From Schmidtea polychroa (Eukaryota), in the NCBI GenBank assembly GCA_044892525.1, contig CM097885.1:207762001-207826000 (forward strand): DNA of 64,000 bases, given 5' to 3'. Every line of letters starts with the position of its first letter. Within the stretch, counting starts at the first letter, position 1. Positions 36,417-55,321 of this stretch are shown here, in pieces. The notes beneath the pieces were generated by a model. The model worked only from the letters and a program-made list of their open reading frames with translations, had not been told where the DNA came from and ran no database searches. The position numbers and the translations under genes were made by a program.

Positions 36417-37160
36417 ATGTTGCCAAGCACGAAATCGCCCATCAAACCCTGCTTCTCCTGCTCGGACAAAAATACCGTAATCCGAGAATTACAGGCCCAG
36501 ATCGGTCGATATAAAAAGAAGATCGACGATCTGGAAGGTACATGGTTTAGCCCAGTACAAATGAAGGAAGTTCAAAAGAAATTGTACCGCAGTGAGCATT
36601 GTCGCGATGCTTTGATAAGCGAAAGTAGAGCTCAGCGTAGCCTAATCAAAGAGCAGTCCGAAGCTCTACATAAAGTTTACGTTCAAGCCGCTACAACCCG
36701 AAGGATTGTTAGTATTCCGATTAAAGAAGCGGACAATGTCTTCCCCGTTCACCATGAACCTTCAGTTAGTTCGCCACCCTTGTCGAAAAGATCTTGTCAG
36801 GAATGTGTGGAGGCCGACCTCTCCCCCAGGCCATCGGACGTACCTACTACCGGCACTGGCAAGGTATTGCATTCAGCCACGACGTCCTCGGCAATCTTGT
36901 CTGCCAACCCCTCAAAACCTAAGCGCCGCCAATTGTCCAGAGCGGAGCGTAAGAAGCGCCAACGTGAACGAGCAATGGTCAAACAACGAGAACTATCTGC
37001 CAACCACCTAAGTGCTTCGAATGATCCACCCGTAACGATCGATCTGACCGTAGGAATCCCAGGGCGAATCATATCTGCCGCTGGTGTGACTTGGGAGGAG
37101 AATGCCTCCGAGTTTTTTGATCTAGATGAGCTATTGGCGGATGCGGGGTGGGAGAAGTGA
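36417..37160 (+). CDS. LTR-encoded 247-aa protein (coiled coil, basic NLS-like patch, acidic tail)
   Basis: Intact ATG-TGA ORF that is more GC-rich than its surroundings; polypyrimidine-TATAG acceptor 10 nt upstream; AATAAA at 37291. Confidence 0.75.
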   Translation: MLPSTKSPIKPCFSCSDKNTVIRELQAQIGRYKKKIDDLEGTWFSPVQMKEVQKKLYRSEHCRDALISESRAQRSLIKEQSEALHKVYVQAATTRRIVSIPIKEADNVFPVHHEPSVSSPPLSKRSCQECVEADLSPRPSDVPTTGTGKVLHSATTSSAILSANPSKPKRRQLSRAERKKRQRERAMVKQRELSANHLSASNDPPVTIDLTVGIPGRIISAAGVTWEENASEFFDLDELLADAGWEK

Positions 37161-37738
37161 TGGCCGCAACACAATGCAACCGTGCAGGGTGCGAATGGAC
37201 AAATATACTATCTTGACTCTTTTTCTTCTTAATCTATTCTCCACCAAGTGTACTTGTTATGTAGTGTATAATTATTTAATGTATCATGATAATAAAATAA
37301 AGAAATATTTGGTTAAATTTTTGTTGTTGTTTAAATCTAACTAGCTGTGATAAAGGTTCAGCGTAGTGTTCGCAAAGCGAGAGTAAAGTTTGAGTTCGAG
37401 AGGCAGTGGTCAATTTTGTACCGAATAATGGGTCAGGGTAGAGGGAGAATCTGATGAGGTAAACAGACGTAAGTCCTTCCATCGGCCGTCAGAAAAGGGA
37501 AGTCGAGGCCTCAGTAAGGAGTAGTCCTAAGGTAGGGGCTCACCTGCTTACTGGAGTCTCGCCGACATAGCACATTTCCAACGTGAAGCAATTCGCGGGT
37601 GCTATGTTGGAGGGCAAGTTGTGCGGGGTCCTGCTCCGGGTTGACACGGGCGTATGTAGCGTAATAATATGGGCACGCACCCCTAGACAAGGACGTAGAT
37701 TGAGCAGAGTCAACCAAGCACTACCCCAGCATAATTTT

Positions 37739-37756
37739 TGGGGGCTCAGCCGGGAT
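37739..37756 (+). promoter_or_regulatory. Primer-binding site, tRNA-Pro
   Basis: TGGGGGCTCAGCCGGGAT versus the canonical Pro PBS TGGGGGCTCGTCCGGGAT (2 mismatches), 7 nt after the LTR end. Confidence 0.85.
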
Positions 37757-38011
37757 ATTATGGAATTTCTGTCGAATAATGTGAATTCACCGGGATTATC
37801 GATTTCAATTAGTGGGCGAATTAAATTGACTAATGCCTATCGAATCTTATCATAAATCACGATTAGAAAATAATAGAATTAAAGATATAAATAAAGTAAA
37901 TAATAGGGAAATAGAATAAAAACAAAATAAATTATAACGAATTAAAAGAAAATGTTTGATGAAATAACCATTAATTAGCTGTATATTATTTTTTTTTCTT
38001 TCTCAATAGAC

Positions 38012-38497
38012 ATGACGGAATTCGCAGAACAGATGCAACAATTAATTAATTTCATTAATATAGAAAACGACCCTATTAAAACACTCATACAAAAAGGAAA
38101 GCGAATCAACAGCATTTTACTCCAAGCAATCGGACATACACCAGTCGTACCTAACCACGTGTTATTGGCCGCAGGTTTAAGCCACTCAGATGAAAAGATA
38201 AATCACGAAACAGTATACCAATGGTACCTAAAACGACTAAAAAACCCGGCCCTAAATCTAGAATACGAGCGAATAAAAGATCAACTACATACAATATCAG
38301 AGGCAATCGAACAAAAGATACAAGAGAAACTCACCAAATTGCGAACCTGTCTGTCTTGCAATCTTCGCCCTATACGCATACTATTTTTACCTTGTGGACA
38401 CCTCAGTCATTGTGAAGAGTGCGTGAAAGATCTGAAACGATGTGCAATATGTAAAAATGGGATAAAAGAAACCCATATGGTTTATTACGGTGATTAA
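38012..38497 (+). CDS. IAP-type C-terminal RING finger protein without BIR domain
   Basis: RTCLSCNLRPIRILFLPCGHLSHCEECVKDLKRCAICKNGIKETHMVYY at the extreme C-terminus after a coiled segment, as in cIAP/XIAP; strong acceptor upstream, AATAAA downstream. Confidence 0.9.
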   Translation: MTEFAEQMQQLINFINIENDPIKTLIQKGKRINSILLQAIGHTPVVPNHVLLAAGLSHSDEKINHETVYQWYLKRLKNPALNLEYERIKDQLHTISEAIEQKIQEKLTKLRTCLSCNLRPIRILFLPCGHLSHCEECVKDLKRCAICKNGIKETHMVYYGD

Positions 38498-39057
38498 AAC
38501 GACTAACCAGATGCAGTGATGTATATGCGCACTAAATTGTTAAAAGACCTTTGAATACGAATATATGTACTTTTAAGTGTGAAATAACTTTAATGTTTAA
38601 TTTTAGTCTCAGAATAAATAAAAATTTTTTGTTGTTATGAATTAGATATTTTATCTCTTTTAATTATATCTTTGGTTATGAGATCGAATGGAGAAGAATA
38701 AAACTAACGTGGAATTAGTCCCAATATAGGCTGCAGGGGTACAAACCGAGCCACCTTCGGGCGGTACGTTTTATTGCAAGAACCCGTTGGGAGGGGATAA
38801 CTGATCAACCCAAGTAAGAAGCGTAGGGCGGGGTACCATCGCATATGATGAGAAGTTTCTACGACATGACTGATCACCATGCCAATGTAGAAATGGATCA
38901 TCGCGATCGTCGTGCGTTTTGAGCAAGGGGGGAAAGGGGAAACACTCTCAAGCGGTAAAGATTAAGTCGACAAATTAAAAGTAGACAGAGAAAATGGTAA
39001 TCTTGAGTAAAAGAGGAAAAGAGAAGTAGAAGCATGCAGAGTGAGGAATATTAAAGC

Positions 39058-39579
39058 TGAGCTGTTGAATAGTCCAGCCGGTCAAGGAAAATGAAAACTG
39101 AGCTGTGAAAAGTCCAGCCAGTTCGGAGATATTAAGATCGAGTTGTTGAATAGTCCAACCGATCAGAAGGAAGAAGATTGAGCTGTTGAATAGTGCCAGC
39201 CAGTCGTAAGATCGAGTTGTTGAATAGTCCAACCGATCAGAAGGAAGAAGATTGAGCTGTTGAATAGTGCCAGCCAGTCGTAAGATCGAGTTGTTGAATA
39301 GTCCAACCGATCAGAAGGAAGAAGATTGAGCTGTTGAATAGTGCCAGCCAGTCGTAAGATCGAGTTGTTGAATAGTCCAACCGATCAGAAGGAAGAAGAT
39401 TGAGCTGTTGAATAGTGCCAGCCAGTCGTAAGATCGAGTTGTTGAATAGTCCAACCGATCAGAAGGAAGAAGATTGAGCTGTTGAATAGTGCCAGCCAGA
39501 CGTAAGATCGAGTTGTTGAATAGTCCAACCGATCAGAAGGAAGAAGATTGAGCTGTTGAATAGTGCCAGCCAGTCGTAA
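39058..39579. repeat. 74-bp tandem array (6 copies) plus degenerate upstream units, in the leader of element B
   Basis: GAGTTGTTGAATAGTCC recurs at 39140, 39214, 39288, 39362, 39436 and 39510. Each unit has two sub-repeats sharing GAG(C/T)TGTTGAATAGT. Confidence 0.97.
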
Positions 39580-40947
39580 AGGCCTAGAAAAATGAGAAAT
39601 AGCAGTTAAGCTACAATGAGATAATATTTACAATTAATAGAGAAAGGGAATATTAAAGCTAGCTAGAAACAAATTGAATATAATTACGAAAATTTGAGTT
39701 TAGAGAGGAAATAAACGAGCTCGGGGAAAAGATAATAAAATTATAATGAAAAAGGAAGGAGAAGAAGAAAATGAATTAAAGAAATAATGAGAAAATAAAG
39801 AATAGGTGAAATGGAGATAATGAGTAGAAGAAGAAAGTAACTAGCTAATTAAAGGGATCCCAGTGAAGTAGAGAAACTCTACTGAATTTTTTTTTTGGGT
39901 AAACCGGGAAAATGTATTTTTATCGGTTCCAGAGTAGAACCGAGTGGGATAATAGTAAATATGAAAAGTAAAACAGCGACAACAGCGCAAAGGAATAAGA
40001 AAACGAAGGGGGGTAATAAGCAGAGACCGACAACGACCTATTTTTACTATAATTGATAACGAATAGATAATTATTACGACTTTATAGATAATTGTTACTA
40101 CCCCATATAGATAATTTAAAATCGACGGAAAATACGGGCTGATGGGAAATTATAACCCGCAGAAAGGATTTCACAAAAGATAGGGGAAGCACAAACAGAA
40201 ACCTAAAAGGTGTCTGTTTTTGAATGTTGTAGAAAGAATGATGAAGTCGTGTAAGCAAATGCAACACGAGATCATTTTTTCATTTTAGATATCAAGCCAA
40301 TCCAGTCAACCAAGACAATCCAGAACCTGCACAAAAGGAATTCGAAGAAATCGACAATCAACCAAGGATAAATCCATTCAGAACCCGCACCGAGAGACAC
40401 AGCAACCGGAAGACTCCAGAACGGAAGAAGATACAGATAGCGACATCTCCAACTTCGAACGAATCATCGATATATTCAACCTCATAGTATTAGCAGCCAT
40501 CTGCCAAGGATTAGTAAATCTCCTCAGGATCTCAGTAGCAGATTCATACAGAATATTTATCGAAGGAAACACAATCAGAACCGAACTCGTCCAATTCAAT
40601 AGCCGCTAATTACCAAGAAGCGTAAGAAAGGAATCACGGATAAACCCAATCTTAGATCTTCAAGTAAGCCAGGAGACGTATTATTTTCAGGAGACGAATT
40701 ACAACAACTCAAAAGAGGACGATCTATTAAACATCAAAGAGGAATATCACAAGGAGCAAGAAGAACCAATCAAGTACCCATATTTGACCAAGAAAATCTC
40801 GGATATACCCCTAGTCGATCTCGAAGTAGAGAAAGTCTGTCCGATATCACTAATAGTTTAGCAACGTCAACCGAGGAATTATCAGCCCAAAGTTTAGTCA
40901 CATCGTTAGACAATTTAAAAGAAACAGACGAACCTAGAACACCAATC

Positions 40948-43152
40948 ATGACGAATGTCGTAAAAACCGACGAGTATAAAGAGAAGTTCAGAGGAGAACC
41001 GTTCAATGGAAATGCAAACAAGTTAGCAACGTTCATAACTAATTTTGAAGTTTATATCACTGTGTGTGGATGGACATCCGAAGCAATTAGTAAAAGGATG
41101 CCGTTGTTTTTGTGCGATAGTGCATTAGAAGTATATTTAGAAGCTAAAGAGAGAGACACGAAATTAGAAAAGTGGGAAGATATTAAAACATTCCTGAAGA
41201 AAACCTTCGGAGCCAGTAAGCCAATCAACCAGGCGTTGGGCGAACTAGCAAATAGGAAACAAAGAGCAAACGAATCGATAACATTATATGCCAGTGAATT
41301 GCGGAGATTAGCGAAGAAAGCAATGAATGGAAAATTACCCGAAGAAAATCTGATCGGTTATTTCATAGAGGGATTACGCCGAGAAGAAGTAAGAGCCTCA
41401 GTAGGTTGTCAAATGTGCAAAACATTAGAGGAAGCCATAGATTGGGCTACAAGATGCGAGCTCCACCTCCCAGCTCAAATAAATATTATGCAAGAAGAGG
41501 GAAGGATAGCGACAGCAATAGCGAAAGCGGATAACGGAGATAACAACAATCAAGAACCGAAAATGAATCAATTTATACCAGGAGCGCATCAAATTTTCAA
41601 ACCACCACAAGGACGATCAAATGGGAATAATGGTAATCGTAACAACCTGAATAATGAGAACAATTTTAATAATCGACGAAATACGAACGATAACAAGCAG
41701 TGCCGAACATGCGGTAAACCAGGACACTGGGACAGAGATTGCTATAGAAATTCAAATTGTAATCGTTGCGGACGGCGTGGACATACCGAAAATGTATGCC
41801 AATTGAGAGGTTGTTTTAACTGTGGTCAGCCAGGTCACATCTCCAGAGATTGCCGAGAAAGGGGCCAACAACAACGACCACCACAGCGAAATAATAATTA
41901 TATGGCGAATCCGCAACGACAAAGCAACCCTAGCGAAGGAAAACAAATGAACGTTATGCAGGAAATCTCGCAGATGAAACAGATGATGCAACAAATGATG
42001 AGGCCAAGACAAGAATCAGCACCCCAACAAACCCAGAATATACGTATGATGAGGAGTACCGAAAATCCCAACAATTATGAAGTGCATCAACATGTACAAG
42101 AATGGCAAAGGCTACAGGCCGAGGAAGAGAGGATAAAACAAGAACGCAACCAACAACGACAAGAACAACCATTGCGAATAAATATGATGAAGTTAGTAAA
42201 AGACATGAAGAGCCAGTATTGCTACAATTACGGGAAAAACCCAAGGGTAGTACCCATGACTGAACCAGAAAAGGTAAAAGAAACAACCACGGAAATGAAA
42301 ACAGAGAATTCAACCACGATTTTAAAAGGAAACCAGAGAATTCAGAAAATATTCTGGAAAAAGATAAAAGATAAAATCGAAAAAGAACATAATAAAGCGA
42401 AAACCGAGACAGAAGATGAAAATAACAAGAGCAAGGAACAAACCAGTCAACTAAACCACCAAATGCTACAGGAATTAGAATCAGAAGAAACAACGATATT
42501 TGAAAGAAAGAAACTAAAGAGAGTACCAAGGATGAGAAATTTGCAAATCAATATGATGAAAAGGACAAAAGATGTAGCATCGTCAGACGAAGAAGAAGAC
42601 TATGTAAGTAGTTTGGGTGGAGAAATACTACAGCTAAATGAAATAAGCGAACCTCCAAAAGGGGAAATCAAAGAGGAAGAAAGCGAAAGCGAGATAACCA
42701 GTGGAAGTGAAGACGAGGATGTCGAAATAAAGTTGAGAAAAGCAGGGGAGGAAGCGATAAAACAGCTAGCCGAAATACTCCCAGTAGTAGTGAGGAACCA
42801 AGAGTTCATCGACGTAATTCCATTCAGGCGATTCGTGCAAAAAGTGATGAAATTGGAAAGAAACGAGAAAGATCTAATACCAAACGAGGAAAAATCAATT
42901 ATAAAAAAGTATATGGAAAAAATGAAGCAGGCCGATACCACGCGGTATGTAATAAAAATTGGAACGAGTAGAGGACTTGAAAGAATGTGGATAAAAAATA
43001 CAGTCACCGACGAACTTTTCGATTGGATACGAGAACATTTGGGAAGTTCGAGAAAGAAAGAATATCTGTATCAATACCAAGGTGAACAGATCAAACCAGA
43101 TATGCACTTAGTAGATGCACTGAAATGGCCAGGAAATACTGAAGTTGCATAA
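40948..43152 (+). CDS. gag: Element B Gag (capsid, three CCHC knuckles, Q-rich and acidic extension, C-terminal Ubl-like domain)
   Basis: FNGNANKLATFITNFE...RKQRANESITLYASELRRLA...FIEGL; CRTC..GHWDRDC, CNRC..GHTENVC, CFNC..GHISRDC. The frame is open upstream to ~40603. Confidence 0.95.
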   Translation: MTNVVKTDEYKEKFRGEPFNGNANKLATFITNFEVYITVCGWTSEAISKRMPLFLCDSALEVYLEAKERDTKLEKWEDIKTFLKKTFGASKPINQALGELANRKQRANESITLYASELRRLAKKAMNGKLPEENLIGYFIEGLRREEVRASVGCQMCKTLEEAIDWATRCELHLPAQINIMQEEGRIATAIAKADNGDNNNQEPKMNQFIPGAHQIFKPPQGRSNGNNGNRNNLNNENNFNNRRNTNDNKQCRTCGKPGHWDRDCYRNSNCNRCGRRGHTENVCQLRGCFNCGQPGHISRDCRERGQQQRPPQRNNNYMANPQRQSNPSEGKQMNVMQEISQMKQMMQQMMRPRQESAPQQTQNIRMMRSTENPNNYEVHQHVQEWQRLQAEEERIKQERNQQRQEQPLRINMMKLVKDMKSQYCYNYGKNPRVVPMTEPEKVKETTTEMKTENSTTILKGNQRIQKIFWKKIKDKIEKEHNKAKTETEDENNKSKEQTSQLNHQMLQELESEETTIFERKKLKRVPRMRNLQINMMKRTKDVASSDEEEDYVSSLGGEILQLNEISEPPKGEIKEEESESEITSGSEDEDVEIKLRKAGEEAIKQLAEILPVVVRNQEFIDVIPFRRFVQKVMKLERNEKDLIPNEEKSIIKKYMEKMKQADTTRYVIKIGTSRGLERMWIKNTVTDELFDWIREHLGSSRKKEYLYQYQGEQIKPDMHLVDALKWPGNTEVA

Positions 43153-46100
43153 AGAAAAACAACCAGCCAACCTTTACGATTGGGCTAAAGATGCCAAGGC
43201 AGAATATGATTTTAATATCAAATTGAAATTAGAACAAATAAAACAATGTACTCTGAGACGAAACCTGGATAAGCTGATCAAACAAATTCAAGAACAAGTA
43301 GAAGACAACTGGGATTTACTCATCACCAGACGAGCCCCAGCCATGTACGAACTAATGAGCCGGTTGCGAGATACAGAAATGCTCCGAATGAGTGATTGGA
43401 GAACCATAAATTTGATCCACAAATATGGAAGGTTAAAAGAAACCCAGCCACAGAGGTTGGAAATAACCATATGGTTACCGAACGAAGAGAAACGACGAAT
43501 AAAAATGAGCAATCAGAGTACAGTAGATGACTTGGTATCAAAAATAAACCAAGAGATAACGGAAAAGGTACGTAGCGAAAGTAGTGATGGTATGGTGGAT
43601 GATGTAGTCATGATGTACGATAAAATAATATTACGAGCGGAGGACGACACCTCGTTAAGCGAAATGGGTATGTGGGACAATCATCAGATAATCAGGATAG
43701 TACCAATGGATGAATTCCGAACAAGAGATGTAACCTATCAAAAAGAAATACGAGACCGGATGAAAACGTTATATCAAAAATCTACAGAAATAATTGAAAT
43801 CCACCAACAATGGTTAAAAGAAAAAGAGCTACAAGGAAAAATCACGAAATTAAATACCAGATCCTGCAGACGAACCCCATGGGAAAGAGTGTGGAATGCA
43901 GAAAATAAGGAATGGGAAATCCGGAAAGGGATCTTCGTAGAAACAGACATTGGTGAGACAGAAAGTGAATCGGAGGAAGAAGAAGAGGAATTTCCAGAAT
44001 ATGAAGAGGAAGCAAGGGAACAGACATCAGATGACGAAGGCGAGACGGATGTCACATCAGAAAGCGAAAATGAAGCGAGACATATTCATGCAATGAGGAA
44101 AAAGGAACGTGAATATGCTGATATGGACGGCGAGGAAGCAATAGAAGCAAGAGAGCGAGAAGAGAAAGAAAGATATAAACAATTAGGCGATATTTTAGCA
44201 ATGGGAGCGAAAAATCAAAAACGCCAGGTAGTAGCGTTGGCTAATATCATCTTAAAAACATCAGAGAATATCCACAATCTGAGAGGAATGGCAAAGGCAA
44301 TAGAGGAATACCGGCAATATAATGAATGGTATCCAGAACAGCTAGAACAAATTATTCGAAAATGGAGAAATCAGGAATGGGCACAAGACACTCAGGAGAG
44401 GTATCACATCCGAATCAAGTATCCGGACAAGAGCATCGAGGAACTAGAGGTACATCCAACAACAAAAATTAGAGAATTAAAAAAGAAATTAGCATATGAA
44501 ACTCCATTCCATCTGCAACTATTCGGAAAATCACTAGACGATAATGCAGACGTCGGGATAACACCCATGAGATTGGAAGAGACAAATGTATTAACAATGG
44601 CAGAAACGTTGGGGAAACCGTTAAAAAGGAAAAGTAAAATTACTAAACCAACAAAAGGCAGTTTGAGTACTCCAAGTCCGAACAAAGCACCAAGTAAATC
44701 TAATGAAACTGAAGAAGTTGAAGAGATCATCCTGGAAGATAGTGACGATGAACCAGGAGAAAGATCACCGCTATTAGTGAGATGGCCGACAGGAGCCGAA
44801 ATGTGGACTAATAACCAGCCATCAACGAGTTATCAACAACCAACGAAACTGAACATCAAAGAAATCATCGACAATACTACGGAAACCGAAACGGATGAAC
44901 AATTCCAGAAGCAAAGAGAACCAACGAAAGTAACACCAGAAGGTCAAACCGATAAAATAATAGACGAATGGAATGAGTGGCTAAGAAATAGCGATAGCTC
45001 ATTACCCAGAACGGATAACGAAAGAAACCCGAATTACGAAAATACCAGAGAAGCCGGAACGATGATGGAAAAACGGGCAAAAGGAAGACCTAAGAAACAA
45101 GGAGAAAAATCTGAGTTCAAAACCAAAGAACAATTAAAGCAAGAACAAGGGCAAGTTCGATTAGAAAAATTGGATAAAATAGTATGGGATCTAAAGGAAG
45201 CCCAACCAACGACCGAAAGAGGAGAAAAATGGATACGAGAATTGATCAAAGATATGTTAATAATAACAAACCCACAACTTAGACGTTCGTGGCAACGGAA
45301 AGTAGCCAGCACGGAAGCTAGACAATTATGGCACACCATTTCGGGGATAATCCCAAAGTTAATCAAAGAGAAAACGAAAACCACCAAAACGGATTGGGAC
45401 GAAACAAAGAGAGTGATTGAGCAGCTCACGACAAATGCAAATGATGACGAACATCATCTAGTGGTAATCACGTATTTGATGTATAATTTGATGGGACTAG
45501 CTGCGAGGAAAATACCAAATAAACAGTTTGCAAATCATGTGGAAATGACCGTTTCGATCATAGAGAATACTATTGAACCACATATTATTCGTGCAGGAGG
45601 ATGGAAAAGACTGATACAAGCGCCACGAAAAAATGAGCAAGAAAGGTCGATGCAAGTTAGATTGAAAAAACTGTTAAATGAACTAGAATGGGAACTACCG
45701 ATGAAAGATCTCGCAAGCAGAAAAGCATCAATAAATTCGTTAATGATGACTATGATGATATGGATGTTGTGCACCAGTGGAGCAACGGGTTTTACCATCT
45801 ACGATTGTGATAATATGATAATGAGAGATAAATACTCATTGAGAAACATAGAAGAATGCAGACAAGCCTCACCCAACAAATTGGACATCGTGAGAACAAA
45901 AGTTACTTACCATGTATATCAAGAATCAGATTTCATCAGAACGCAAGCAAGGGAATGCGTAGTATCAAAAAAGGTACTCGCATATTACTGTGGACAATAT
46001 TCGTATTCGACTCTTATACTACCCGGTCTGGATAAAGAAATCGTATCAATACAACGAGAGGACTGTAAAGAGCTATTTAGAACCGGAGCGCTAAAAATGC

Positions 46101-47152
46101 ATAACGGAGTGACGATTCACGGACAAACTGGAATGATTAAAACCGAAAGTGTTTACGTATCCGGAAAAGTAAAATCATCAGATGGGTCATGTAACGGAGG
46201 TACGTATACAATCCGAGGCGAGGTAATATCAGGAGTAGTAGTGATCGAGTCTTATACGGTTGAATTAAAAGAATACGAAGCGCAATTTGACGCAAATAAT
46301 TATCAGACGAAGACCAACCCAGCGTGTAAAGCTACAGAAAACGTATGCAGGACAGGAGTATCAACTATAATCTATGATGCTAATACCCAAAAATGCCGAC
46401 TCCAACTGTTAAAAAGTGCTTTGTTCAATGAAGTAAAAGGAGAAATTTACGAGAACGAGAACGACGAGGATGGAAACGACAGAGTGAGAATGCGAAATGG
46501 AAAACCGATGCCACCATCTCCCAGAGAAAAGAGACTTTCAACGCAGAAGACACCAACAGCATTAATCACAGACGATCCAGATCTAGGTATGAGATTTATC
46601 AAAGAGAAAGAAACCACCAAATGTGACAGTATAGTATATAAAACCAATTACGCAGGTATCTACATGTCGAGACAAATAATCGATAGAGCAGTGGGAAAGA
46701 TAGCAACGGAGGACGTAAAACTATACTTATATGCAAATAATAAAATGGATTTTCTATTTCATCGTGGACAAACGACCTTGCAAAAAGTATATTACGATCT
46801 GATACAAAACGATTGTTCATTGAATAAAGAAATATTGAAAACAAAGCTAGCTATTGCGATAACGCACCCCGATAACACGATGCCATCACTCCCACTACCA
46901 GACGGACATTTTGGTAGAATGGTAGGAGAAGTGATGTACACATACCAGTGTACCAAGACGTATGCACGAATGCCGGAAAAATCCATACTACCCGAAAAGA
47001 GATGTGCAAATGAATTAGAAATTCGTTATAAAGGACAAAATCGATTCGTCCAACCAGTCACTAGAATTATGAATCCAGTGGGTTTCTACCCAAATCTCTT
47101 TAACTGTTCTAATGCATACGGACCTTTGTATGAAAGACCCGATGGGAAATGA
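43145..47152 (+). CDS. Element B polyprotein segment: 2x Ubl, AT-hook, Bcl-2-like domain, signal peptide, class III-type glycoprotein ectodomain
   Basis: YHIRIKYPDKSIEELEVHPTTKIRELKKKL...LFGKSLDD (Ubl); KGRPKK; IEPHIIRAGGWKRL (BH2-like); GFTIYDCDN...YYCG...DGSCNGG...GEVMYTYQC...FVQPVTRI. +1 frame relative to gag; no ATG start. Confidence 0.88.
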   Translation: MHKEKQPANLYDWAKDAKAEYDFNIKLKLEQIKQCTLRRNLDKLIKQIQEQVEDNWDLLITRRAPAMYELMSRLRDTEMLRMSDWRTINLIHKYGRLKETQPQRLEITIWLPNEEKRRIKMSNQSTVDDLVSKINQEITEKVRSESSDGMVDDVVMMYDKIILRAEDDTSLSEMGMWDNHQIIRIVPMDEFRTRDVTYQKEIRDRMKTLYQKSTEIIEIHQQWLKEKELQGKITKLNTRSCRRTPWERVWNAENKEWEIRKGIFVETDIGETESESEEEEEEFPEYEEEAREQTSDDEGETDVTSESENEARHIHAMRKKEREYADMDGEEAIEAREREEKERYKQLGDILAMGAKNQKRQVVALANIILKTSENIHNLRGMAKAIEEYRQYNEWYPEQLEQIIRKWRNQEWAQDTQERYHIRIKYPDKSIEELEVHPTTKIRELKKKLAYETPFHLQLFGKSLDDNADVGITPMRLEETNVLTMAETLGKPLKRKSKITKPTKGSLSTPSPNKAPSKSNETEEVEEIILEDSDDEPGERSPLLVRWPTGAEMWTNNQPSTSYQQPTKLNIKEIIDNTTETETDEQFQKQREPTKVTPEGQTDKIIDEWNEWLRNSDSSLPRTDNERNPNYENTREAGTMMEKRAKGRPKKQGEKSEFKTKEQLKQEQGQVRLEKLDKIVWDLKEAQPTTERGEKWIRELIKDMLIITNPQLRRSWQRKVASTEARQLWHTISGIIPKLIKEKTKTTKTDWDETKRVIEQLTTNANDDEHHLVVITYLMYNLMGLAARKIPNKQFANHVEMTVSIIENTIEPHIIRAGGWKRLIQAPRKNEQERSMQVRLKKLLNELEWELPMKDLASRKASINSLMMTMMIWMLCTSGATGFTIYDCDNMIMRDKYSLRNIEECRQASPNKLDIVRTKVTYHVYQESDFIRTQARECVVSKKVLAYYCGQYSYSTLILPGLDKEIVSIQREDCKELFRTGALKMHNGVTIHGQTGMIKTESVYVSGKVKSSDGSCNGGTYTIRGEVISGVVVIESYTVELKEYEAQFDANNYQTKTNPACKATENVCRTGVSTIIYDANTQKCRLQLLKSALFNEVKGEIYENENDEDGNDRVRMRNGKPMPPSPREKRLSTQKTPTALITDDPDLGMRFIKEKETTKCDSIVYKTNYAGIYMSRQIIDRAVGKIATEDVKLYLYANNKMDFLFHRGQTTLQKVYYDLIQNDCSLNKEILKTKLAIAITHPDNTMPSLPLPDGHFGRMVGEVMYTYQCTKTYARMPEKSILPEKRCANELEIRYKGQNRFVQPVTRIMNPVGFYPNLFNCSNAYGPLYERPDGK

Positions 47153-48436
47153 TGATGTTACCGGGAAAAACCATATCCGAGGAACCCAAGAAATTTGGAT
47201 TAATAGAACTCGCCACAGAGCTGGATTTCAAACCTATAGACGTGTCAAACGGTGGTATGTATTCCCCAGAAGATCTAGAAACAGCACGACTTAACGTACT
47301 CTTCCCAGCCAGACGAGAATCCATTTTGTCTAATATGGTAACAATAACTGGGGGCACAAACTATCAATCAGGCCCGAATTACGAGCTGCTATTATCGCCA
47401 GACCATTTTCAACAAGCTACGTCAAACATGATGAAAGCAATGTGGGGAAGATTCTTAGTTTTTGGACAAATGATGGCCGGGATATTAGGGATCATACTCA
47501 TAATTCAGATAGTTAGAGTAATACTAACACAAATGTTAGCTTGTTTCGACATATACAAGCGGGAAAAGAAAGTTAACTGGAAAATGATAGTAGGTTTCTT
47601 ACCATTTTTAGCTAAAACCATGGTATTACATGGTCACTCAAAAGACATTCATCGGATAAAGCGATTGATTAAAATATTGACAAAGATTAAAGGAACCGAC
47701 GAAGAAGTAGGCAGACGATTCCGGAAAGTAATGTACGATGAAGCAACAAGACGACAATTGAAAAAGAATAAGCCAAAATTCTTGGACCGATTTAGAAGCC
47801 AATCATCTAACAGCGATAGTGACGACGATGATAACGGGAACGATAAATGTCTTTATCCAAACAGAAACCCAAACGAAAAACCAATGGAAACGGCACCATA
47901 TTGGGAAAAGGAAAAGACAAACACCTGGATCGCCAATGGAAGCTATATACCACCGGATATCGTGGGACCACAAGCAGCTTTGACCATGACACAAAATATG
48001 TATCCGCAATTACCGAGTCAACCCGGTATGCATTATATGCCGACACGACGTACCAAAAGTGTAGATCAAGCAGATGACGTGAGAACAATCGCAGCGATGA
48101 GTCTACCTGGAGGTCCAGCAGTAACAGTCATGATCCAAATCAATGGTAAAGAAACCAATGCTATGATAGACACAGGAGCTAATGTATCAGCGATATCGAT
48201 TAATCAAATCCCCAGTAAACACTGGAAAGATATCGAATCAACAACAATTCACATCATGTAGTAAAGAAACAGTGGACGTGGTCGGAAGATGGTGGACTAC
48301 ATTGAGATACCAGGACAACGAAATTGAAACGTATTTGGCAGTAATACCAAAACTTAGCGTACCATGCATAATCGGAACGGACCTGATGCCAGAATTATTA
48401 AAAGAAGTCGTAATAGACTTAACATTGTTAAGTTAA
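47149..48436 (+). pseudogene. Element B polyprotein segment: glycoprotein TM anchor, cytoplasmic linker, aspartic protease (frameshifted)
   Basis: TM FGQMMAGILGIILIIQIVRVIL; AMIDTGA (48169). The C-terminal half of the protease (CIIGTDLM) lies in the +1 frame 48255-48436. Confidence 0.88.
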
Positions 48437-51400
48437 CAACTATGTGTTTAAAAGACAAAACCGGTAGAATATGCAAAATGAATGCAGTAATCAGATGTCC
48501 AGAAAAAATAATAGTACCAGCAAAATCACAGATGATTTGTCAGATAAAAGTGGATACGGGTATGGAAGGAGAAGTTATCTTTGAACCAAGCAAGTCATTC
48601 GAAAAGCGACGAGAGTTACCACTCGCAAGGGAAATAATAACAATAAACCAAGAAAAAGTGATACCGCTCAACATCACGAATTTCGAAGAAGAAGACAAAA
48701 TCATCTATGAGAATGAAAAATTGGGAAGATTGACCCCAATGATGGACATAGAATTACCGAAAGTGACCAACGAGATGATCAAAGATGATGAATTATGGAC
48801 AATAGATAGTATGTTGTTGACGAATGATGAAAAGAAAAAATTGCACCGATTGTTGGTGGAATATAAAGATATATTCGCCATCTCAGATTTAGATTTGGGT
48901 ACATGCGATGTTACCCTACATGCAATACCCCTCATAGATGAAACTCCAATTGCATTAAGACCATACAAGCTAGCAGAAATGCAAAAAGAAATAGCCGAAG
49001 CAGAAGTACAAAAGATGCTAGACGCAAAAGTAATCGAACCGAGTTGCTCACCTTGGCAATTCCCAGTGGTCATGGTGAAAAAGAAAGATGGCACCCAACG
49101 ATTCTGTATCGATTATCGGAAGTTAAACGCAGTAACCAAGAGAGATACCTATCCATTGCCGGACATCAATGAGATGTTATTGATGTTGCAAGGGGCAGCA
49201 TATTTTACTTCTTTAGATCTAAAAAGTGGATACTGGCAGATTAAAGTCAAAGATGAGGACAAAGAGAAAACAGCTTTCACGTTGGGACGAGATCTATATC
49301 AATTCAGGAAAATGCCATTCGGACTGACCAACGCACCAGCATCATTTCAACGGTGTATGAACTTTGTCACTCATGGAATCAAACAATGTATGGTATATAT
49401 TGATGATTTACTAATCTATTCAGCGACATTTGAACAACATCTGGAAGATATCCGAAACGTATTTATTAGATTAAGACAGTGGAAACTCAAACTCAAACCA
49501 TCAAAATGCGATTGGGCAAAGGAAAAAGTCACGTTTTTGGGACACATAGTGTCAGCTAAAGGAAAGGAGCCAGATCCAAGAAACATCGAGAAAATAAAAA
49601 CATGTCCAGCACCGAAAACGGTCACCCAAGTTCAGGAATTTCTAGGATTATGCGGATACTATCGCAAATTTATCAAAAATTATGCAGGAATTGCAAAACC
49701 AATCCAGGAATTAGTAAAGAAGGACATTTCGTTCATTTGGGGGAAGGAACAACAAGAGGCGTTTGAAACGCTGAGAGACAAACTAATCGAAGCACCTATC
49801 CTCGTACACCCAGATTTTAAGAAGCCATTTCTATTGGCAACGGATGCAAGCGGGTACGCGGCAGGCGCGATTCTGGGACAATTAGACGAAGAAGGAAAAG
49901 AAAGAGTGATTGGATACTACAGCAGAACGTTTAAAAAGCACGAGAAAAACTATTCCGTAACCGAGAGAGAAGCGTTAGCAATTATACAAGCGATTAAACA
50001 TTTTCGATATTTGTTGTGGGGACACGAAATATGTATCACAACAGATCATCAACCACTAGTATGGCTTGGTCAACACAAAGAAGCTTCAAGTAGATTGATG
50101 CGATGGGCAATGCAGTTACAAGAATATTCACCGTTCATAAAATTCAAAGCGGGAAGAGCGAATGCCAATGCGGATTGTATGTCCAGATTTATCTTTCCAG
50201 ATTTAGTAGATCACGAAATGCAACGAATATGTCTGATGGTAGCAGAAGATTTAGATTTTTGCCAATTACGGAAAGACCAACAAGAGGATACAGAGTTGAA
50301 GCAAATCATTGAGTATGTGAAAACAGGGAAAGCAGAGGTATATGAGAAAGATCAAAAATTGAAGGAGCATATGGATAAACATCGACATCGATATATTATC
50401 GAGAAAGACTGGTTGTTGATAATGGATGGAGAAAAAAGACTGATGTGCATTCCCGAGAATAGACGTAAAGAGCTGCTAACACAATACCATGACGGAAGAC
50501 TCGGAGGACATATGTCGTCTAAAAAGACGTTGGCAAGAATGAAACAGAAATATTTTTGGCCTACGTTAATCGAAGACGTAACCGAATGGGTAAAAAATTG
50601 TCTAACTTGTGCGACCAGGAAAAATACTGGATCGAAATGGAAAGCACCTTTAACGCCAATGCCAGTACCAATAGAACCAATGACAATGATATCCATGGAC
50701 GTAGTTGGTCCACTACCAGAGTCAGATAAAGGAAATATTTACATTTTGGTGATCACAGACTTTCTTACGAAATTTCCAGAAGCATTCGCGATGCCAGACC
50801 AAAAAGCTAAAACAATCGCAAAAATTTTGGTAGAAGAGATATGCTGCCGATATGGAACACCAAAACAGATATTAACCGATCAGGGAACTAATTTTATGAG
50901 TGAAATAATGAGCGAAGTAACAAATTACTTCAAAATAGCAAAGCTAAGAACATCTCCATACCACCCTCAAACCAATGGGATGACGGAAAGATTTAATGGA
51001 ACACTTATACAAATGTTATCAAACTACGTCGATCGTCACCAACGAGATTGGGACGAATATATAAACCTATGTCTTATGGCATACAGAATGTCAATTCATG
51101 CATCAACGAAAATGAGCCCATTTAAATTAATGTACGGAAGAGAGTGCAACATGCCAATGGACCTGGAATACCAACCACCGATATCGCAGTATATGGAGAT
51201 CGACGATTATGTTACGAAATTCAAGGAAAGAATGCAAGAAATTTGGGAAACTGCGGGATTAAATATCAAGTTCTACCAGGAAAGTTATAAAGATTTACAC
51301 GATCGAAAGAAAAACGTGAAGCAACATACGTTTCAAACAGGTGATTGGGTAATGATAGAAACCCCGGAATTAATTCCAGGAACCACAAAAAAGTTACAAC

Positions 51401-54400
51401 GCAACGGAAAAGGACCATATGAGATTCTATTTGTAGGCGAAACCAATGTAAGAGTGAAATTGATAAATAATCCATTCACCAGGCCAATATACGTGAACGT
51501 GGCACGATGTAAATCAATTCCAAAAACCGCCACCAGTCAACCAGAAGGTCGAACATTAACCACACGTTCGCAAACATACAGAATGAATATGATGCAACAA
51601 CTCGCAGAACCTATCACTGGACGATTGGGCATACAACCATCGGAAGCGGAAAAAATCGTACGAGAGGTAAAGATAAAATTACCCGGATGGGCAAAAGATC
51701 GATTAGATTTCGAAATTTTAGGAGGATTATTGACGATGATCGAAAATTATGCGAACAGAGAGAGGACACATCCGTTATTGCGAGTAGTCAAAAGCCAATG
51801 GCCAATATTATTTACAATAACAGATCATTACGGAGACACACCATTACACAAACTCATGAAAGTAGGTAACAACGAGCAAATACTAGAAACAATAGAAGCA
51901 TTTCACGACTGCAAGCGATCAACAGAACAAACAAACAACCAAGGTTACACACCATTAATGATAGCAGCAAACAGAGGAAAAACCAAAGACATTATAACCG
52001 CATTACTTGATACTGGATCAAAAATAACTACACAAGACCACGAGCGGAAAAATGCACTACATCATGCTATCGAAGGGAAAAGTACCGAGGCGTTCACGTC
52101 ATTGATGGAACTACTATCATATGAGGACAATCGGGAAGTCGGAAACATGTATGATGGATTGTTGACAGCGATCAAAGAAAAACTGACGACAATTACCGGA
52201 ATATTAATTACCTGGAGAAATCCAATTCAAAACGATTATATGATCAACGTAAACGAAGCGTTCACGAGAGGAGAGAACACGCTGATGAGAGAAGCTATGA
52301 AAGGACATCAGTTATTCGAAATCCCAAATCAATTGTTAGAACGAGGAATAAAATTCACAAATCACAAAGATGAACAGTTAGCAAAAAAGCGAATCGACAC
52401 ATTCGAAAAATCAATATTCCAATTTACTAACCAAGTACGAAATAAATATTGGGAAACGGTAAGTGTGTTATATATGATGGACACAATGAATAACATCCGC
52501 GAGAATTACCTGGATATTATCCAAATACTTACAGCAGAGGAACGAATCAATAATCCAAACGGAAAGAAAACGAAAATAAGGTATGAGAAATCCAGGGAAT
52601 CAAAGTCAACAACGAACCATACGGTCACAAACAACGTCATCAAAACCAAATCAATGAGTATAGGTCAAGAGGCAATAATACGCAAAGCAAAAGAAGTTTT
52701 CTTTGAGGAAATGCTAGAGTTGTCAGACGAAATAATATTGTCAAAAATAATAAAAGCAGTACATACATACGCAAGAGATCAAACCACGGGATTAGATATC
52801 GGGAAAATCAAAACCTTCTTGCCTCGAGCATTTACGATGGTAACGAAGGATTCCAGAACACCCCTACAACAAGCAATACTAGCAGCGAAAGAAAATAGAG
52901 CAATAACGATCATGAGAATCCTTGGAGATATGGGCGAGGAAACCAACACGAAAAATGAACAAGGCGAAACCGCCATGATGTATGCAGCTATAACGAAAAT
53001 ACACCCAAAAACACTCCACATACTACATCAATCGGGATCGAGACTAGACGAAAGGTCCAATGAAGGAAATTCCACCTTGGACTGGGCAACCATACAGCCA
53101 AACTTAGAAATGATCAGATTCATTTGCAAAAATGCGACAAAAGAAGAAGTTGAAAATATATGCAAAAACACATCTCAATTTCAGTGGAATACGGTACGGA
53201 AAAATCTGGAAGCAATGAAATTATTAGTAACATGGAGAATACCACAAAGTAATAAATATGCGATAAATATAAACGAATTCTACGAAAACGGAGAAAACGC
53301 GATGGTAAAGAATACATTAACTAAAGGGGGGACACCAAAAATTATTTTAATAGTACTAAACAGAGAAGACCTCAAATTCACGCAAAATCAGAGCGAGCAA
53401 CAAAGAATTGGGAAACATCGTCGCATTCAATTAAGAGAATTAGTCAAAGAATGGAATAGAAAGAGACACGCTGCAACGGGCAGAAAAGAGTTTGAATTCG
53501 AAGCAAAATTAGCAAGAAACAGAGTGCTAACAGCATATCGCAGATTATTGAACGATATAAATGTCGAGGACGACATTTTAAATGACAGTGGGGGAGATAA
53601 ACACGATGACAATAACGGAAAAGGCCGAAAGGAGGATAAAGAAAAAAGAGAACCGGAGGAGGATAAACCGGAAAACAAGGATTCGGATACGAAAAGAGAG
53701 GGAAACAGCCCGGGAACTAAGACCAAAGAGGAGGAAAAACCGAATAATGGAAAACAGAGGGTATGCCTACCTTTCACTAACAAAGAAATAGAGACAAATA
53801 TGATATTAATGATAATTATGCTTACCATGATAGAGTTAGTAACAGCTCATGGAGGGACGAGAACGATAAAAGAAACCAAAGAAGCGGAGAATCAAGATAG
53901 CAAAGAGGACGAACTAAAACAAGAAAAGAAAAAGCAAGCACAAGAGCAGCAGTGGGATTTAAAGGAAGAATGGGACTTAAAGGAAAGGTGCATACTAGGA
54001 AGATGCATGTCTAGAGCGTATCAGAAACTAGTACTGATAAATGAGGACACAGAACCAATAACAGAAGTAAGAATACAAGAAGCATACCGAAATCGAGACG
54101 GGAAAAGAATAACGAACGTTAAAGGAAAAGAGGTACACCTAGGAAAAGGTGGTGAAGTAGTAATAACGCAGCTCCAACCAAGAAAAGAGCACAAAGTCTG
54201 TATTTCAAGATTAGGACCGGGTGAGAGATGCCATCAATATGTGACGCAGCAGCAGCCCCCGAAGGAATATACGGTTTGTATCTGGAGGAACGAATCAAAA
54301 AGAGAATGCCGACGATACCCGGGGAAAAGAGGAAAGAAAAGGAAAAACCACGACGAAAAGGACGAAGGAGGAAAGCACAAGAAAACTGGCGAGGAAGCTC

Positions 54401-54801: not shown

Positions 54802-54961
54802 AAAGGAATATGACTGTATATAATTGTAAAAAGTAAGTATATCTTATGTATATAACAGTACTATATCTTTATATAAGCGCGGTATCAATATTATACAATA
54901 ACGGGAATCATAAAATAAAATTAAATTTACATAAGAGTTGAAAAGTGTATATAAATTAAGA

Positions 54962-55321
54962 ATGGATCAAGGAAATAACGAAATGAACCACAATACAGTA
55001 ACTGAAGAATTATGGAAGCAACAATGTGCCGTATTAGCACAATTAGTGTCCAATTTGCAAGAACAAGGACTGACGATGCACAGAAACCTAATCGAGAGTA
55101 TGAACAGAGGATTTAGTTATTTGAAGATAATTGAAGACCAGAGGTTAAAAATCGAACAAATGCAAAGAGAAATGGAGAGGATAACCCAATATAGCCATAG
55201 ACAGGAAATTGAATTAGAAAGAATGATGGAGGAAGCAGAACAGACAGAAATAGAAGACTGGTCGGAATGGCTAATGAATAGAGAGGAGAGCGGACACGAA
55301 GCCGACTCTTCCGAACCCTAA
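54962..55321 (+). CDS. Element B accessory coiled-coil/acidic protein
   Basis: Intact ORF (first ATG 54962) with the same A-rich codon usage as the other element genes; flanked by AT-rich spacers. Confidence 0.7.
   Translation: MDQGNNEMNHNTVTEELWKQQCAVLAQLVSNLQEQGLTMHRNLIESMNRGFSYLKIIEDQRLKIEQMQREMERITQYSHRQEIELERMMEEAEQTEIEDWSEWLMNREESGHEADSSEP

What the first reader, a model, noticed from the sequence alone, without database searches (positions are those of the whole stretch)
45728..47545. Chuvirus-like class III fusion glycoprotein placed upstream of pol, inside the polyprotein (element B)
Seen: a hydrophobic signal-like stretch (SINSLMMTMMIWMLCTSGATG), then a Cys-patterned ectodomain (FTIYDC, YYCG, DGSCNGG, CSLNKEIL.TKLAIA, GEVMYTYQC, C..EL...FVQPVTRI) and a TM anchor, all 5' of the protease. 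Known: this motif series is typical of chuvirus (Jingchuvirales) glycoproteins, which have been captured by BEL/Pao elements, and env in retroviruses and errantiviruses is a separate ORF 3' of pol. Inference: an independent capture by a gypsy lineage with a gag-env-pol order, processed by signal peptidase from a membrane-threaded polyprotein as in flaviviruses and alphaviruses.
Basis: partly seen in the sequence, partly recalled or inferred. Interest (0 to 1): 0.93.

Follow-up and report, generated by a model that had tools for sequence, protein, structure and literature searches.

The report
Viral fusion glycoprotein inside retrotransposon polyprotein

Summary
Window 45728-47545 encodes a signal-like segment, a cysteine-rich ectodomain and a membrane anchor, all 5' of the protease.

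- **Family:** it matches Pfam PF24664 (Monjiviricetes_fusion) at E 1.8e-45 and 2.7e-19.
- **Fold:** an AlphaFold2 model of the larger piece (pLDDT 90.8) hits herpesvirus gB in the PDB (E about 1e-11). It hits chuvirus and other Jingchuvirales glycoproteins in BFVD (E down to 9e-32), so the fold is class III.
- **Host element:** a 29.8-kb Ty3/gypsy LTR element (33870-63715) with 3.86-kb LTRs 99.92% identical and a 4-bp target duplication.
- **Layout is a lineage trait:** a second element in the window, about 30% identical, has the same gag-G-PR-RT-IN order. At least seven database relatives carry G and pol in one uninterrupted ORF; in two of these (P0170, P0166) gag motifs are in it as well.
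- **State of this copy:** as assembled, G has one frame change and the protease probably two.

The layout is not new. Arkhipova & Yushenova (2019) described env in frame between gag and pol in giant planarian Burro elements, which element B matches feature by feature. Sacco et al. (2022) and Chary & Hayashi (2026) report gag-env-pol gypsy elements in nematodes, bryozoans and flatworms. Excision by signal peptidase is plausible, because a signal-like segment precedes G in 16 of 16 relatives, but it is untested.

The parts
33870..63715 (+). Element B: complete giant Ty3/gypsy (Burro-like) LTR retroelement, 29,846 bp
   Evidence: Direct repeats bound it. Termini are TG..CA with a 4-bp target duplication.
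33870..37731 (+). 5' LTR (3.86 kb)
   Evidence: blastn against the 3' LTR: 99.92% identity over 3862 columns, 2 mismatches and 1 gap.
59855..63715 (+). 3' LTR
33866..33869 (.). Target-site duplication CCTC, left copy; the right copy is at 63716-63719
   Evidence: Read from the flanks.
37739..37755 (+). Candidate primer-binding site, starting TGG 7 nt after the 5' LTR
   Evidence: Read; this is inference. The window holds no tRNA gene to compare with.
38012..38497 (+). Accessory ORF with a C-terminal RING finger, upstream of gag
   Evidence: Pfam zf-C3HC4_3, E 6.4e-11.
39059..39650 (.). Tandem repeat of 74-nt units in the leader
   Evidence: family D1.
40948..54801 (+). gag-spacer-G-PR-RT-RH-IN-ankyrin coding region. 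Broken as assembled: four frame changes in all (one between gag and spacer, one in G, probably two in PR) and no independent nonsense codon found.
   Evidence: Intact relatives read the same order in one ORF.
41101..41382 (+). Gag capsid-like domain (Retrotrans_gag)
   Evidence: Pfam PF03732, E 3.3e-10.
41701..41853 (+). Three CCHC zinc knuckles of gag
   Evidence: Regex count of 3; Pfam zf-CCHC.
45728..47545 (+). Class III fusion glycoprotein G, from the signal-like segment to the end of the membrane anchor. One frame change inside it in this copy.
   Evidence: Pfam PF24664 at E 1.8e-45 and 2.7e-19 on the two pieces. AF2 pLDDT 90.8. Foldseek hits gB and chuvirus G.
45728..45790 (+). Internal signal-like segment (basic residues, hydrophobic core, small residues at -3 and -1), ending 5 residues before the first conserved Cys
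   Evidence: The same arrangement is seen in 16 of 16 polyprotein-type relatives.
47470..47541 (+). Membrane anchor of G
   Evidence: Kyte-Doolittle scan; translation.
48127..48430 (+). Aspartic protease (approximate bounds); probably two frame changes inside it
   Evidence: Pfam RVP matches the first half. Four stops lie in the nominal frame, and an alternative-frame piece is weakly protease-like.
49075..49551 (+). Reverse transcriptase (YIDD motif)
   Evidence: Pfam RVT_1, E 7.7e-36. Best PDB match is Ty3 Gag-Pol 7q5b, E 8e-121. Motif.
49738..50127 (+). RNase H
   Evidence: Pfam RT_RNaseH and RT_RNaseH_2.
50449..51018 (+). Integrase (H2C2 zinc domain plus catalytic core)
   Evidence: Pfam Integrase_H2C2 and rve.
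51871..53121 (+). Ankyrin-repeat region fused downstream of integrase
   Evidence: Pfam Ank_2 and Ank_4.
55407..56795 (+). Accessory TRAF-like ORF (RING plus MATH)
   Evidence: Pfam TRAF-mep_MATH, E 3.3e-26.
21087..30600 (+). Element A: a second, divergent element with the same gag-spacer-G-PR-RT-IN order. It has three in-frame stops and one frame change after the gag-like ORF. No LTRs were found in the window.
23830..25716 (+). Glycoprotein region of element A (approximate bounds), in the same frame as its PR and RT
   Evidence: Pfam PF24664 at E 1.4e-50 and 4.1e-12; about 30% identical to element B's G.

Best explanation
Element B (33870-63715) is a young copy of a giant Ty3/gypsy LTR retroelement of the planarian Burro type. 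In this lineage the envelope gene is not a separate ORF 3' of pol. It is a Monjiviricetes/Jingchuvirales-type class III fusion glycoprotein placed in frame between gag (plus a lineage-specific spacer) and the protease. Intact members encode gag-G-PR-RT-RNaseH-IN as one polyprotein.

**Shown:** the identity and fold of G, the gypsy identity of pol, the domain order, and conservation of that order in a divergent neighbour and in uninterrupted natural relatives.

**Inferred mechanism:**
1. While the polyprotein is translated, the internal signal-like segment just before G targets the chain to the ER.
2. The ectodomain is threaded into the lumen.
3. Signal peptidase cuts after the small -3/-1 residues and frees the N-terminus of G.
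4. The anchor about 570 residues later stops transfer, so PR-RT-IN stays cytosolic.
5. The element's own protease later separates the G tail from pol.

This gives a flavivirus- or alphavirus-like solution to making a membrane protein from the middle of a polyprotein.

This copy, as assembled, cannot make the full product. G has one frame change, PR probably two, and gag is in a different frame from the rest.
For: **G identity**
- Pfam PF24664 scores 155.5 and 69 bits against a cut-off of 27.
- The AF2 model has pLDDT 90.8.
- The top 50 PDB matches are all herpesvirus gB, E 9e-12 to 1e-9.
- The top BFVD matches are chuvirus or chu-like glycoproteins, E 9e-32; the best TM-score is 0.75.
- All 14 cysteine columns that are invariant or at least 90% conserved are kept.

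**Gypsy identity**
- Domain order PR-RT-RH-IN.
- Ty3 Gag-Pol is the best solved relative, E 8e-121.
- TG..CA termini and a 4-bp target duplication.

**Conserved in-frame placement**
- Element A has the C-terminal part of G, PR and RT in one ORF.
- P0170 (2871 aa) and P0166 (3700 aa) hold gag motifs, G, PR, RT, RH and IN in one ORF.
- P0004, P0008, P0013, P0018 and P0162 hold G through IN in one ORF.
- Element B's gag matches the N-termini of six G-bearing polyproteins.
- The nearest pol relatives, at 48-50% identity, carry PF24664.

**Signal model**
- In 16 of 16 polyprotein-type sequences a hydrophobic core (KD11 at least 2.0) ends 7-15 residues before the first conserved Cys.
- 15 of 16 have small-x-small residues in between, and 14 of 16 have K or R before the core.
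- A strong anchor follows about 570 residues later.

**Literature**
- Burro elements are described with env in frame between gag and pol (PMC6431247).
Against: - No RNA or protein data were available, so splicing around G cannot be excluded.
- The small-x-small criterion is permissive and would often be met by chance.
- No dedicated signal-peptide or topology predictor was available.
- Element B and 4 of 8 intact relatives have a second, weaker hydrophobic segment 25-45 residues after the anchor. If it spans the membrane, pol would face the lumen and the model would fail.
- The copy in the window is interrupted, so it says nothing about function by itself.
- I could not compare it with published Burro sequences. 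'Burro-type' rests on matching features, not on alignment.
- The BIR, BCL2-like and dUTPase motifs reported for Burro1 were not detected here.
Confidence: 0.72

Rival explanations
1. G and pol are not translated as one chain. The genomic RNA is alternatively spliced, so that one mRNA expresses G and another joins gag to PR-RT-IN and skips G. In-frame continuity would then be tolerated, not used.
For: Retroviruses and errantiviruses express env from spliced RNA (established knowledge). In both window elements gag is in a different frame from the G-pol frame, so expression is at least not one simple ORF here.
Against: Frame continuity from G into PR-RT-IN is kept in elements only 30-40% identical in G. 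That is unexpected if the junctions were never translated. The internal signal-like segment sits hundreds of residues deep in every relative and not after a start codon.
Confidence: 0.18
2. The glycoprotein region is a decaying relic. The elements spread as ordinary intracellular retrotransposons, and G no longer does anything.
For: Element B's G has one frame change and element A's polyprotein has three in-frame stops. The ectodomain has a single N-glycosylation sequon.
Against: All 14 conserved cysteines are retained. The fold is predicted with high confidence. Full-length uninterrupted G exists in many divergent relatives. G and pol diverge in parallel: 37-41% against 48-50% identity to the same relatives. 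Single-base frame changes are also a common error in long-read assemblies of A-rich sequence.
Confidence: 0.08
3. It is a chance juxtaposition: a chuvirus-derived endogenous viral element, or a nested insertion, that happens to lie inside one gypsy copy.
For: Jingchuvirales glycoprotein EVEs are common in arthropod genomes and often lie near gypsy fragments (PMC10084718).
Against: The same position and frame recur in element A and in more than 15 database polyproteins. No other chuvirus gene is present. The ORFs of element B longer than 300 residues show no RdRp or nucleoprotein hit.
Confidence: 0.02

Closest known systems
Burro / GYPSM1 giant gypsy-like LTR retrotransposons of planarians (Grohme et al. 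2018; Arkhipova & Yushenova 2019, PMC6431247)
   Same: - Total size about 30 kb with multi-kb LTRs.
- Gag with Retrotrans_gag and three CCHC knuckles.
- MATH/TRAF, RING and ankyrin modules, plus tandem repeats.
- An env region in frame between gag and PR that hits mononegavirus fusion glycoproteins.
   Different: - In element B the MATH/TRAF module is a separate ORF 3' of pol, and a RING ORF lies 5' of gag.
- BIR, BCL2-like and dUTPase motifs were not detected.
- The 2019 text linked the env to gypsy Env and F-type proteins; here the fold is class III.
- No sequence comparison with Burro1-4 was possible.
Nematode endogenous retroviruses with a captured RNA-virus glycoprotein (Sacco et al. 2022, J Gen Virol 103:001739; title seen, paper not held)
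   Same: [quoted passage not shown] From my own memory of the abstract, which I could not verify here: a continuous gag-env-pro-pol ORF and Nyamiviridae/Chuviridae-like glycoproteins.
   Different: The host phylum differs, and those elements are of ordinary size without the accessory modules. The relationship of their G and pol to those of the window was not tested.
GAG-ENV-POL 'errantiviruses' with HSV/gB-type env in Nematoda, Bryozoa and Platyhelminthes (Chary & Hayashi, eLife 2026, PMC13524379)
   Same: Ty3/gypsy pol, a class III env upstream of pol, and an ectodomain flanked by a signal peptide or TM and a second TM.
   Different: They describe separate GAG, ENV and POL ORFs and do not use the word polyprotein. 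Here, and in intact relatives, the domains share one frame.
Mosquito BEL/Pao elements with a Chuviridae glycoprotein (Dezordi et al. 2020, PMC7642597)
   Same: A retroelement carrying a chuvirus-like class III glycoprotein.
   Different: The window's pol is Ty3-like.
Glycoproteins of Jingchuvirales (chuviruses) and other Monjiviricetes; class III fusogens such as herpesvirus gB
   Same: Sequence family PF24664. The best structural matches are chuvirus G at E 9e-32, then gB at E 1e-11.
   Different: Identity to the BFVD viral glycoproteins is only 16-19%, and 22-29% to stand-alone G-like proteins of about 650 aa in the protein library. Those are stand-alone proteins of about 650 aa with an N-terminal signal, whereas here G is internal to a retroelement polyprotein.
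Flavivirus and alphavirus structural polyproteins (a mechanistic analogy only)
   Same: Internal signal and stop-transfer segments would let host signal peptidase release a glycoprotein from the middle of a polyprotein, while a viral protease cuts on the cytosolic side (established knowledge; inferred here).
   Different: There is no homology, and processing of this element is untested.

Membership tests
Ty3/gypsy (Metaviridae) LTR retroelement | pol domain order PR-RT-RNaseH-IN, with RT and IN closest to Ty3-type enzymes | tested here: met
   Pfam gives the order. The best solved relative is Ty3 Gag-Pol 7q5b at E 8e-121, and Ty3 RT 4ol8 scores 1e-92.
Ty3/gypsy (Metaviridae) LTR retroelement | LTRs with TG..CA termini and a 4-6 bp target-site duplication | tested here: met
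   LTRs of 3.86 kb at 99.92% identity; TG..CA termini; target duplication CCTC.
Ty3/gypsy (Metaviridae) LTR retroelement | Gag with a capsid-like domain and CCHC knuckles | tested here: met
   PF03732 at E 3.3e-10; three CCHC knuckles.
Pfam PF24664 Monjiviricetes_fusion | Score above the curated gathering cut-off (27 bits) | tested here: met
   155.5 and 69-69.7 bits for the two pieces of element B's G; 172.4 and 45.3 bits for element A.
Class III viral fusion protein | Class III fold: elongated multidomain beta-rich ectodomain with a long central helix | tested here: met
   AF2 pLDDT 90.8, with a 48-residue helix among beta domains. Foldseek probability is 1.00 to gB and to chuvirus G. Only the piece upstream of the frame change was modelled.
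Class III viral fusion protein | C-terminal membrane anchor after the ectodomain | tested here: met
   Kyte-Doolittle 2.5 over 19 residues at 47470-47541.
Class III viral fusion protein | Trimer with internal bipartite hydrophobic fusion loops; fusion activity | not tested
   No multimer model and no access to model coordinates. Activity cannot be read from sequence.
Burro-type giant planarian gypsy elements | About 30 kb in total; env in frame between gag and PR; gag with three CCHC; accessory MATH/TRAF, RING and ankyrin modules | tested here: met
   compared with the description in PMC6431247.
Burro-type giant planarian gypsy elements | BIR, BCL2-like, SUMO-like and dUTPase motifs reported for Burro1-4 | tested here: not met
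   Pfam finds none at E up to 0.01; ubiquitin scores only E 0.22. The helical region before G could not be classified (pLDDT 54, no Foldseek match). The source paper describes accessory content as variable between elements, so this does not exclude membership.
Burro-type giant planarian gypsy elements | Sequence similarity to published Burro/GYPSM1 consensus sequences; planarian host | not testable with these tools
   No Repbase or planarian genome is available. The host of the window is not given. Background GC of about 25% fits an AT-rich genome.
Errantivirus in the classical sense (insect gypsy with env) | env as a separate ORF 3' of pol, F-type (class I) | tested here: not met
   G is 5' of PR and is class III.
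Endogenous chuvirus (Jingchuvirales EVE) | Other chuvirus genes (L/RdRp, N) or a stand-alone G without a retroelement context | tested here: not met
   No such domains in element B's ORFs of more than 300 residues. G is flanked in frame by gag and pol.

The most novel reading that the evidence does not exclude
These elements are enveloped retrovirus-like agents that make their envelope protein by co-translational excision, by signal peptidase, from the middle of Gag-Pol. That polyprotein strategy is otherwise known only from positive-strand RNA viruses. The cleaved internal signal would be left as a C-terminal membrane anchor on the upstream gag-spacer product, so capsid precursor, envelope and pol would all be tethered to the same membrane in equal amounts.
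Probability: 0.35. Interest if true: 0.6.

Novelty: already known. Interest (0 to 1): 0.3.

Why it matters
How LTR retrotransposons become viruses is usually told as gaining an env ORF after pol. Elements that carry a class III fusogen inside Gag-Pol show a second route, and they raise an open mechanistic question: how is a lumenal glycoprotein released from a cytosolic polyprotein, and in what ratio to Gag and Pol? The placement itself is published for planarian Burro elements, nematode elements and other gag-env-pol gypsy elements, so this window adds a well-preserved example and not a discovery.

What this analysis adds:
- An explicit class III and chuvirus-like structural assignment.
- Evidence that an internal signal-like segment is conserved in all 16 polyprotein-type relatives examined.
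- Evidence that the G of these elements clusters apart from stand-alone G-like proteins.

Tried and rejected
- **PDB by sequence, G piece:** no hit even at E 10. Only fold comparison links it to gB.
- **Word-indexed protein search with the cut G piece:** one hit only. The exhaustive search was needed.
- **Names for the stand-alone G-like proteins of about 650 aa:** only beetle 'Glycoprotein' entries carried names, so virus and EVE could not be told apart in the tree.
- **Exact-clade bootstrap for the polyprotein-type G group:** support was poor (3/60 and 1/70), because a few short sequences wander. A looser measure holds: all 17 lie on a side of at most 30 of 123 sequences in 91% of replicates. 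The tree is a crude NJ tree.
- **BCL2-like domain upstream of G, as reported for Burro1:** no Pfam or PDB sequence hit. The single-sequence AF2 model had pLDDT 54, and Foldseek gave only designed helical repeats. Inconclusive.
- **Spacer between gag and G:** no homologue among relatives, and only a sub-threshold ubiquitin hit.
- **C-terminal signal-plus-TM module after the ankyrin region:** no Pfam or PDB match.
- **LTRs of element A:** none found in the window.
- **tRNA to match the primer-binding site:** none in the window.
- **Sacco et al. 2022:** not held in the library. **Supplements of PMC13524379:** not held.
- **Host organism:** could not be determined with the tools.
- **Rejected:** nested or chance EVE insertion, and BEL/Pao identity.
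Full report
**1. What is at the coordinates**

Translating from 45728 gives a basic-hydrophobic-small-residue stretch, followed five residues later by the first conserved Cys motif of an ectodomain. The membrane anchor ends just before 47545.

The region scores far above threshold against Pfam PF24664, 'Monjiviricetes_fusion, viral fusion glycoprotein'. The piece before the frame change gives E 1.8e-45 (155.5 bits) and the piece after it gives E 2.7e-19 (69 bits); the cut-off is 27 bits.

The ectodomain piece has 14 cysteines in 454 residues, against 2 in the 860 residues before it. These are the 14 cysteine columns that are invariant or at least 90% conserved in an alignment of 68 family members.

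In this copy, as assembled, the glycoprotein is read in two frames, with one frame change inside it. I searched and folded the pieces apart and never joined them.

**2. Fold**

An AlphaFold2 model was built for the piece upstream of the frame change, about 70% of the ectodomain, with the 68-sequence alignment. Mean pLDDT was 90.8, and the model shows beta-rich domains around a 48-residue helix.

- Against the PDB, the 50 best Foldseek matches are all herpesvirus glycoprotein B (E 9e-12 to 1e-9, probability 1.00).
- Against BFVD, the best matches are glycoproteins of Tacheng tick virus 4, chu-related and chu-like viruses and Wenling crustacean virus 14 (E 9e-32 to 9e-30, TM-score up to 0.75). 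Xinmo-, nyami- and rhabdo-like viruses follow, and gB comes later.

'Chuvirus-like class III fusion glycoprotein' is therefore supported by named hits. A sequence search of the PDB found nothing, so the link to gB is structural only.

**3. The carrier**

Two direct repeats of 3.86 kb (33870-37731 and 59855-63715) are 99.92% identical. They start with TG, end with CA, and are flanked by the 4-bp duplication CCTC. They bound a 29,846-bp element, in this order:

- a RING ORF and a 74-nt tandem repeat in the leader;
- gag, with Retrotrans_gag and three CCHC knuckles;
- an 860-residue spacer with no detectable homologue;
- G, then protease, RT (YIDD), RNase H and integrase;
- a long ankyrin-repeat extension;
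- separate TRAF-like (RING plus MATH) and coiled-coil ORFs.

Pol is Ty3/gypsy. The best solved relative is the Ty3 Gag-Pol polyprotein (E 8e-121), and thousands of gypsy pol proteins match.

**4. Is the position of G a property of the lineage?**

Yes, on four lines of evidence.

- **Element A.** This second element in the window (21087-30600) is only about 30% identical to B in G and 36-46% in RT and IN. It has the same order, and the C-terminal part of its G, its protease and its RT lie in one ORF.
- **Database relatives.** An exhaustive HMMER search with the G piece found 762 relatives. The 20 or so best (E 1e-101 to 1e-39) are mostly long proteins. Proteins of the stand-alone viral size, about 650 aa, appear only from E about 1e-25, at 22-29% identity. 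Pfam scans show uninterrupted natural polyproteins:
  - P0170 (2871 aa): gag, G, PR, RT, RH, IN.
  - P0166 (3700 aa): CCHC, G, PR, RT, RH, IN.
  - P0004, P0008, P0013, P0018 and P0162: G through IN.
  - P0006: CCHC, G and two proteases.
- **Co-divergence.** Element B's gag matches the N-termini of six G-bearing polyproteins. The nearest pol relatives (48-50% identity) carry PF24664 in the same protein.
- **Clustering.** In a rough NJ analysis of 123 G domains, all 17 polyprotein-type sequences, both window elements included, lie together on a side of at most 30 sequences in 91% of 70 bootstrap replicates. The exact membership of the group is not stable.

The capture is therefore old relative to this clade, and G has diverged along with pol. 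It is not a fresh capture in this element.

**5. State of this copy**

I give counts only. Along gag to integrase there are four frame changes: one between gag and the spacer, one inside G, and probably two inside the protease. In the protease, the nominal frame shows four stops over a short stretch, while an overlapping piece in another frame is weakly protease-like (E 4e-4 to 2e-3). I found no independent nonsense codon.

The frame offset between the gag-type ORF and the next ORF is the same in element A, so it may be a programmed shift. However, relatives with gag and G in one ORF do not need one.

Element A has three in-frame stops, and no LTR was detected for it in the window. Because the LTRs of B are nearly identical and the sequence is A-rich, some of B's frame changes could be assembly errors. 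I could not test this.

**6. How it most likely works**

- **Shown:** domain identities and order, and conservation of the single frame.
- **Inferred:** in all 16 polyprotein-type sequences examined, a hydrophobic core (mean hydropathy at least 2.0 over 11 residues) ends 7-15 residues before the first conserved Cys. Of these, 15 have small-x-small residues in between and 14 have a basic residue just before the core. A strong anchor follows about 570 residues later.

This is the layout of an internal signal sequence and a stop-transfer anchor. Gag and the spacer would stay cytosolic, the ectodomain would enter the ER lumen and be freed by signal peptidase, and PR-RT-IN would return to the cytosol to be released by the element's protease.

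**Caveats:**
- The small-x-small test is permissive.
- No dedicated predictor was available.
- Element B and four of eight intact relatives have a second, weaker hydrophobic segment 25-45 residues after the anchor. If it spans the membrane, the topology would be inverted.
- Splicing around G cannot be excluded without RNA data.

**7. Comparison with what is known**

- **Arkhipova & Yushenova 2019 (PMC6431247)** describe giant gypsy-like Burro/GYPSM1 elements of the planarian Schmidtea mediterranea. These exceed 30 kb and occur in thousands of copies. Gag has three CCHC knuckles, and the accessory motifs are RING/AIR1, MATH_TRAF_C, BIR, ankyrin, BCL2-like, SUMO-like and dUTPase. [quoted passage not shown] - Element B matches in size, gag, MATH/TRAF, RING, ankyrin, tandem repeats and the env position.
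  - BIR, BCL2-like and dUTPase were not detected, and the MATH/TRAF module is a separate ORF. That paper says such modules alternate between polyprotein subdomains and accessory ORFs.
- **Chary & Hayashi (PMC13524379)** report GAG-ENV-POL Ty3/gypsy elements with gB-type class III env in Nematoda, Bryozoa and Platyhelminthes. They cite Sacco et al. 2022 for nematode elements that captured an RNA-virus glycoprotein.
- **Li et al. 2021 (PMC8532177)** show that BURRO1 is transcribed, is enriched in intestine, and is held down by the piRNA pathway.

I could not align the window to published Burro sequences or learn the host, so 'Burro-type' rests on features. The AT-rich background (GC about 25%) fits.

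**8. Verdict**

The novelty claim is not supported. The processing mechanism is plausible and untested.

Before I had fully applied the operators' rule on break positions, I wrote ORF bounds as printed by the ORF tool into notebook checkpoint entry 1. I also used them as references in tool calls. Some of those bounds coincide with frame changes of this virus-like element. One search printed frame relations and stop counts. This report gives counts only and treats each broken gene as one part.

I built no joined, repaired or consensus sequence. The consensus line that the alignment tool printed was not used.

Noticed in passing
window 21087-30600: A second, much more divergent element (A) with the same gag-spacer-G-PR-RT-IN layout lies just upstream of element B. 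It has three CCHC knuckles and three in-frame stops, and no LTRs were detectable in the window.
   Followed up: yes
window 53788-53844 and 54580-54636: The far C-terminus of the pol extension, after the ankyrin repeats, holds a second signal-like segment and a TM segment about 250 residues apart, with several cysteines between them. Intact relatives also have two strong hydrophobic segments after integrase, but they show no sequence similarity. There is no Pfam or PDB match. This may be a second membrane protein at the conventional env position.
   Followed up: partly
window 38012-38497; 55407-56795; 56990-58045; 58162-58926: Accessory ORFs lie inside element B: a RING-finger ORF before gag, a TRAF-like RING+MATH ORF after pol, and two coiled-coil ORFs after that. 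They look like host-derived signalling or ubiquitination modules.
   Followed up: partly
window 43145-45727: The 860-residue spacer between gag and G has no homologue in related elements. Its only hit is a sub-threshold ubiquitin-family match (E 0.22) near 44408-44512. The all-helical stretch just before G could not be classified (pLDDT 54).
   Followed up: partly
P0004, P0006, P0162; L001 13878-17231: Several related polyproteins carry two or three separate aspartic-protease domains. One of them lies directly after the G tail, and in one case another lies after integrase.
   Followed up: no
window 39059-39650: A tandem array of 74-nt units lies in the leader between the 5' LTR and gag. The central copies are 100% identical.
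   Followed up: no
window 22-1860: A third gypsy-type pol fragment (RT, RNase H, integrase) is cut by the start of the window.
   Followed up: no
window 9412-10515 and 18784-19944: A pogo-like DDE_1 transposase ORF is present. A fragment of a type-B DNA polymerase (organellar/viral type) sits next to an N run and may be a Maverick/Polinton remnant.
   Followed up: no
window 36417-37160 (and the same stretch in the 3' LTR): A 247-codon ORF with no Pfam match lies inside the LTR.
   Followed up: no
window 38000-60000: There is a strong excess of A over T on the coding strand of element B (AT skew 0.23-0.44), against an AT-rich background of about 25% GC.
   Followed up: no
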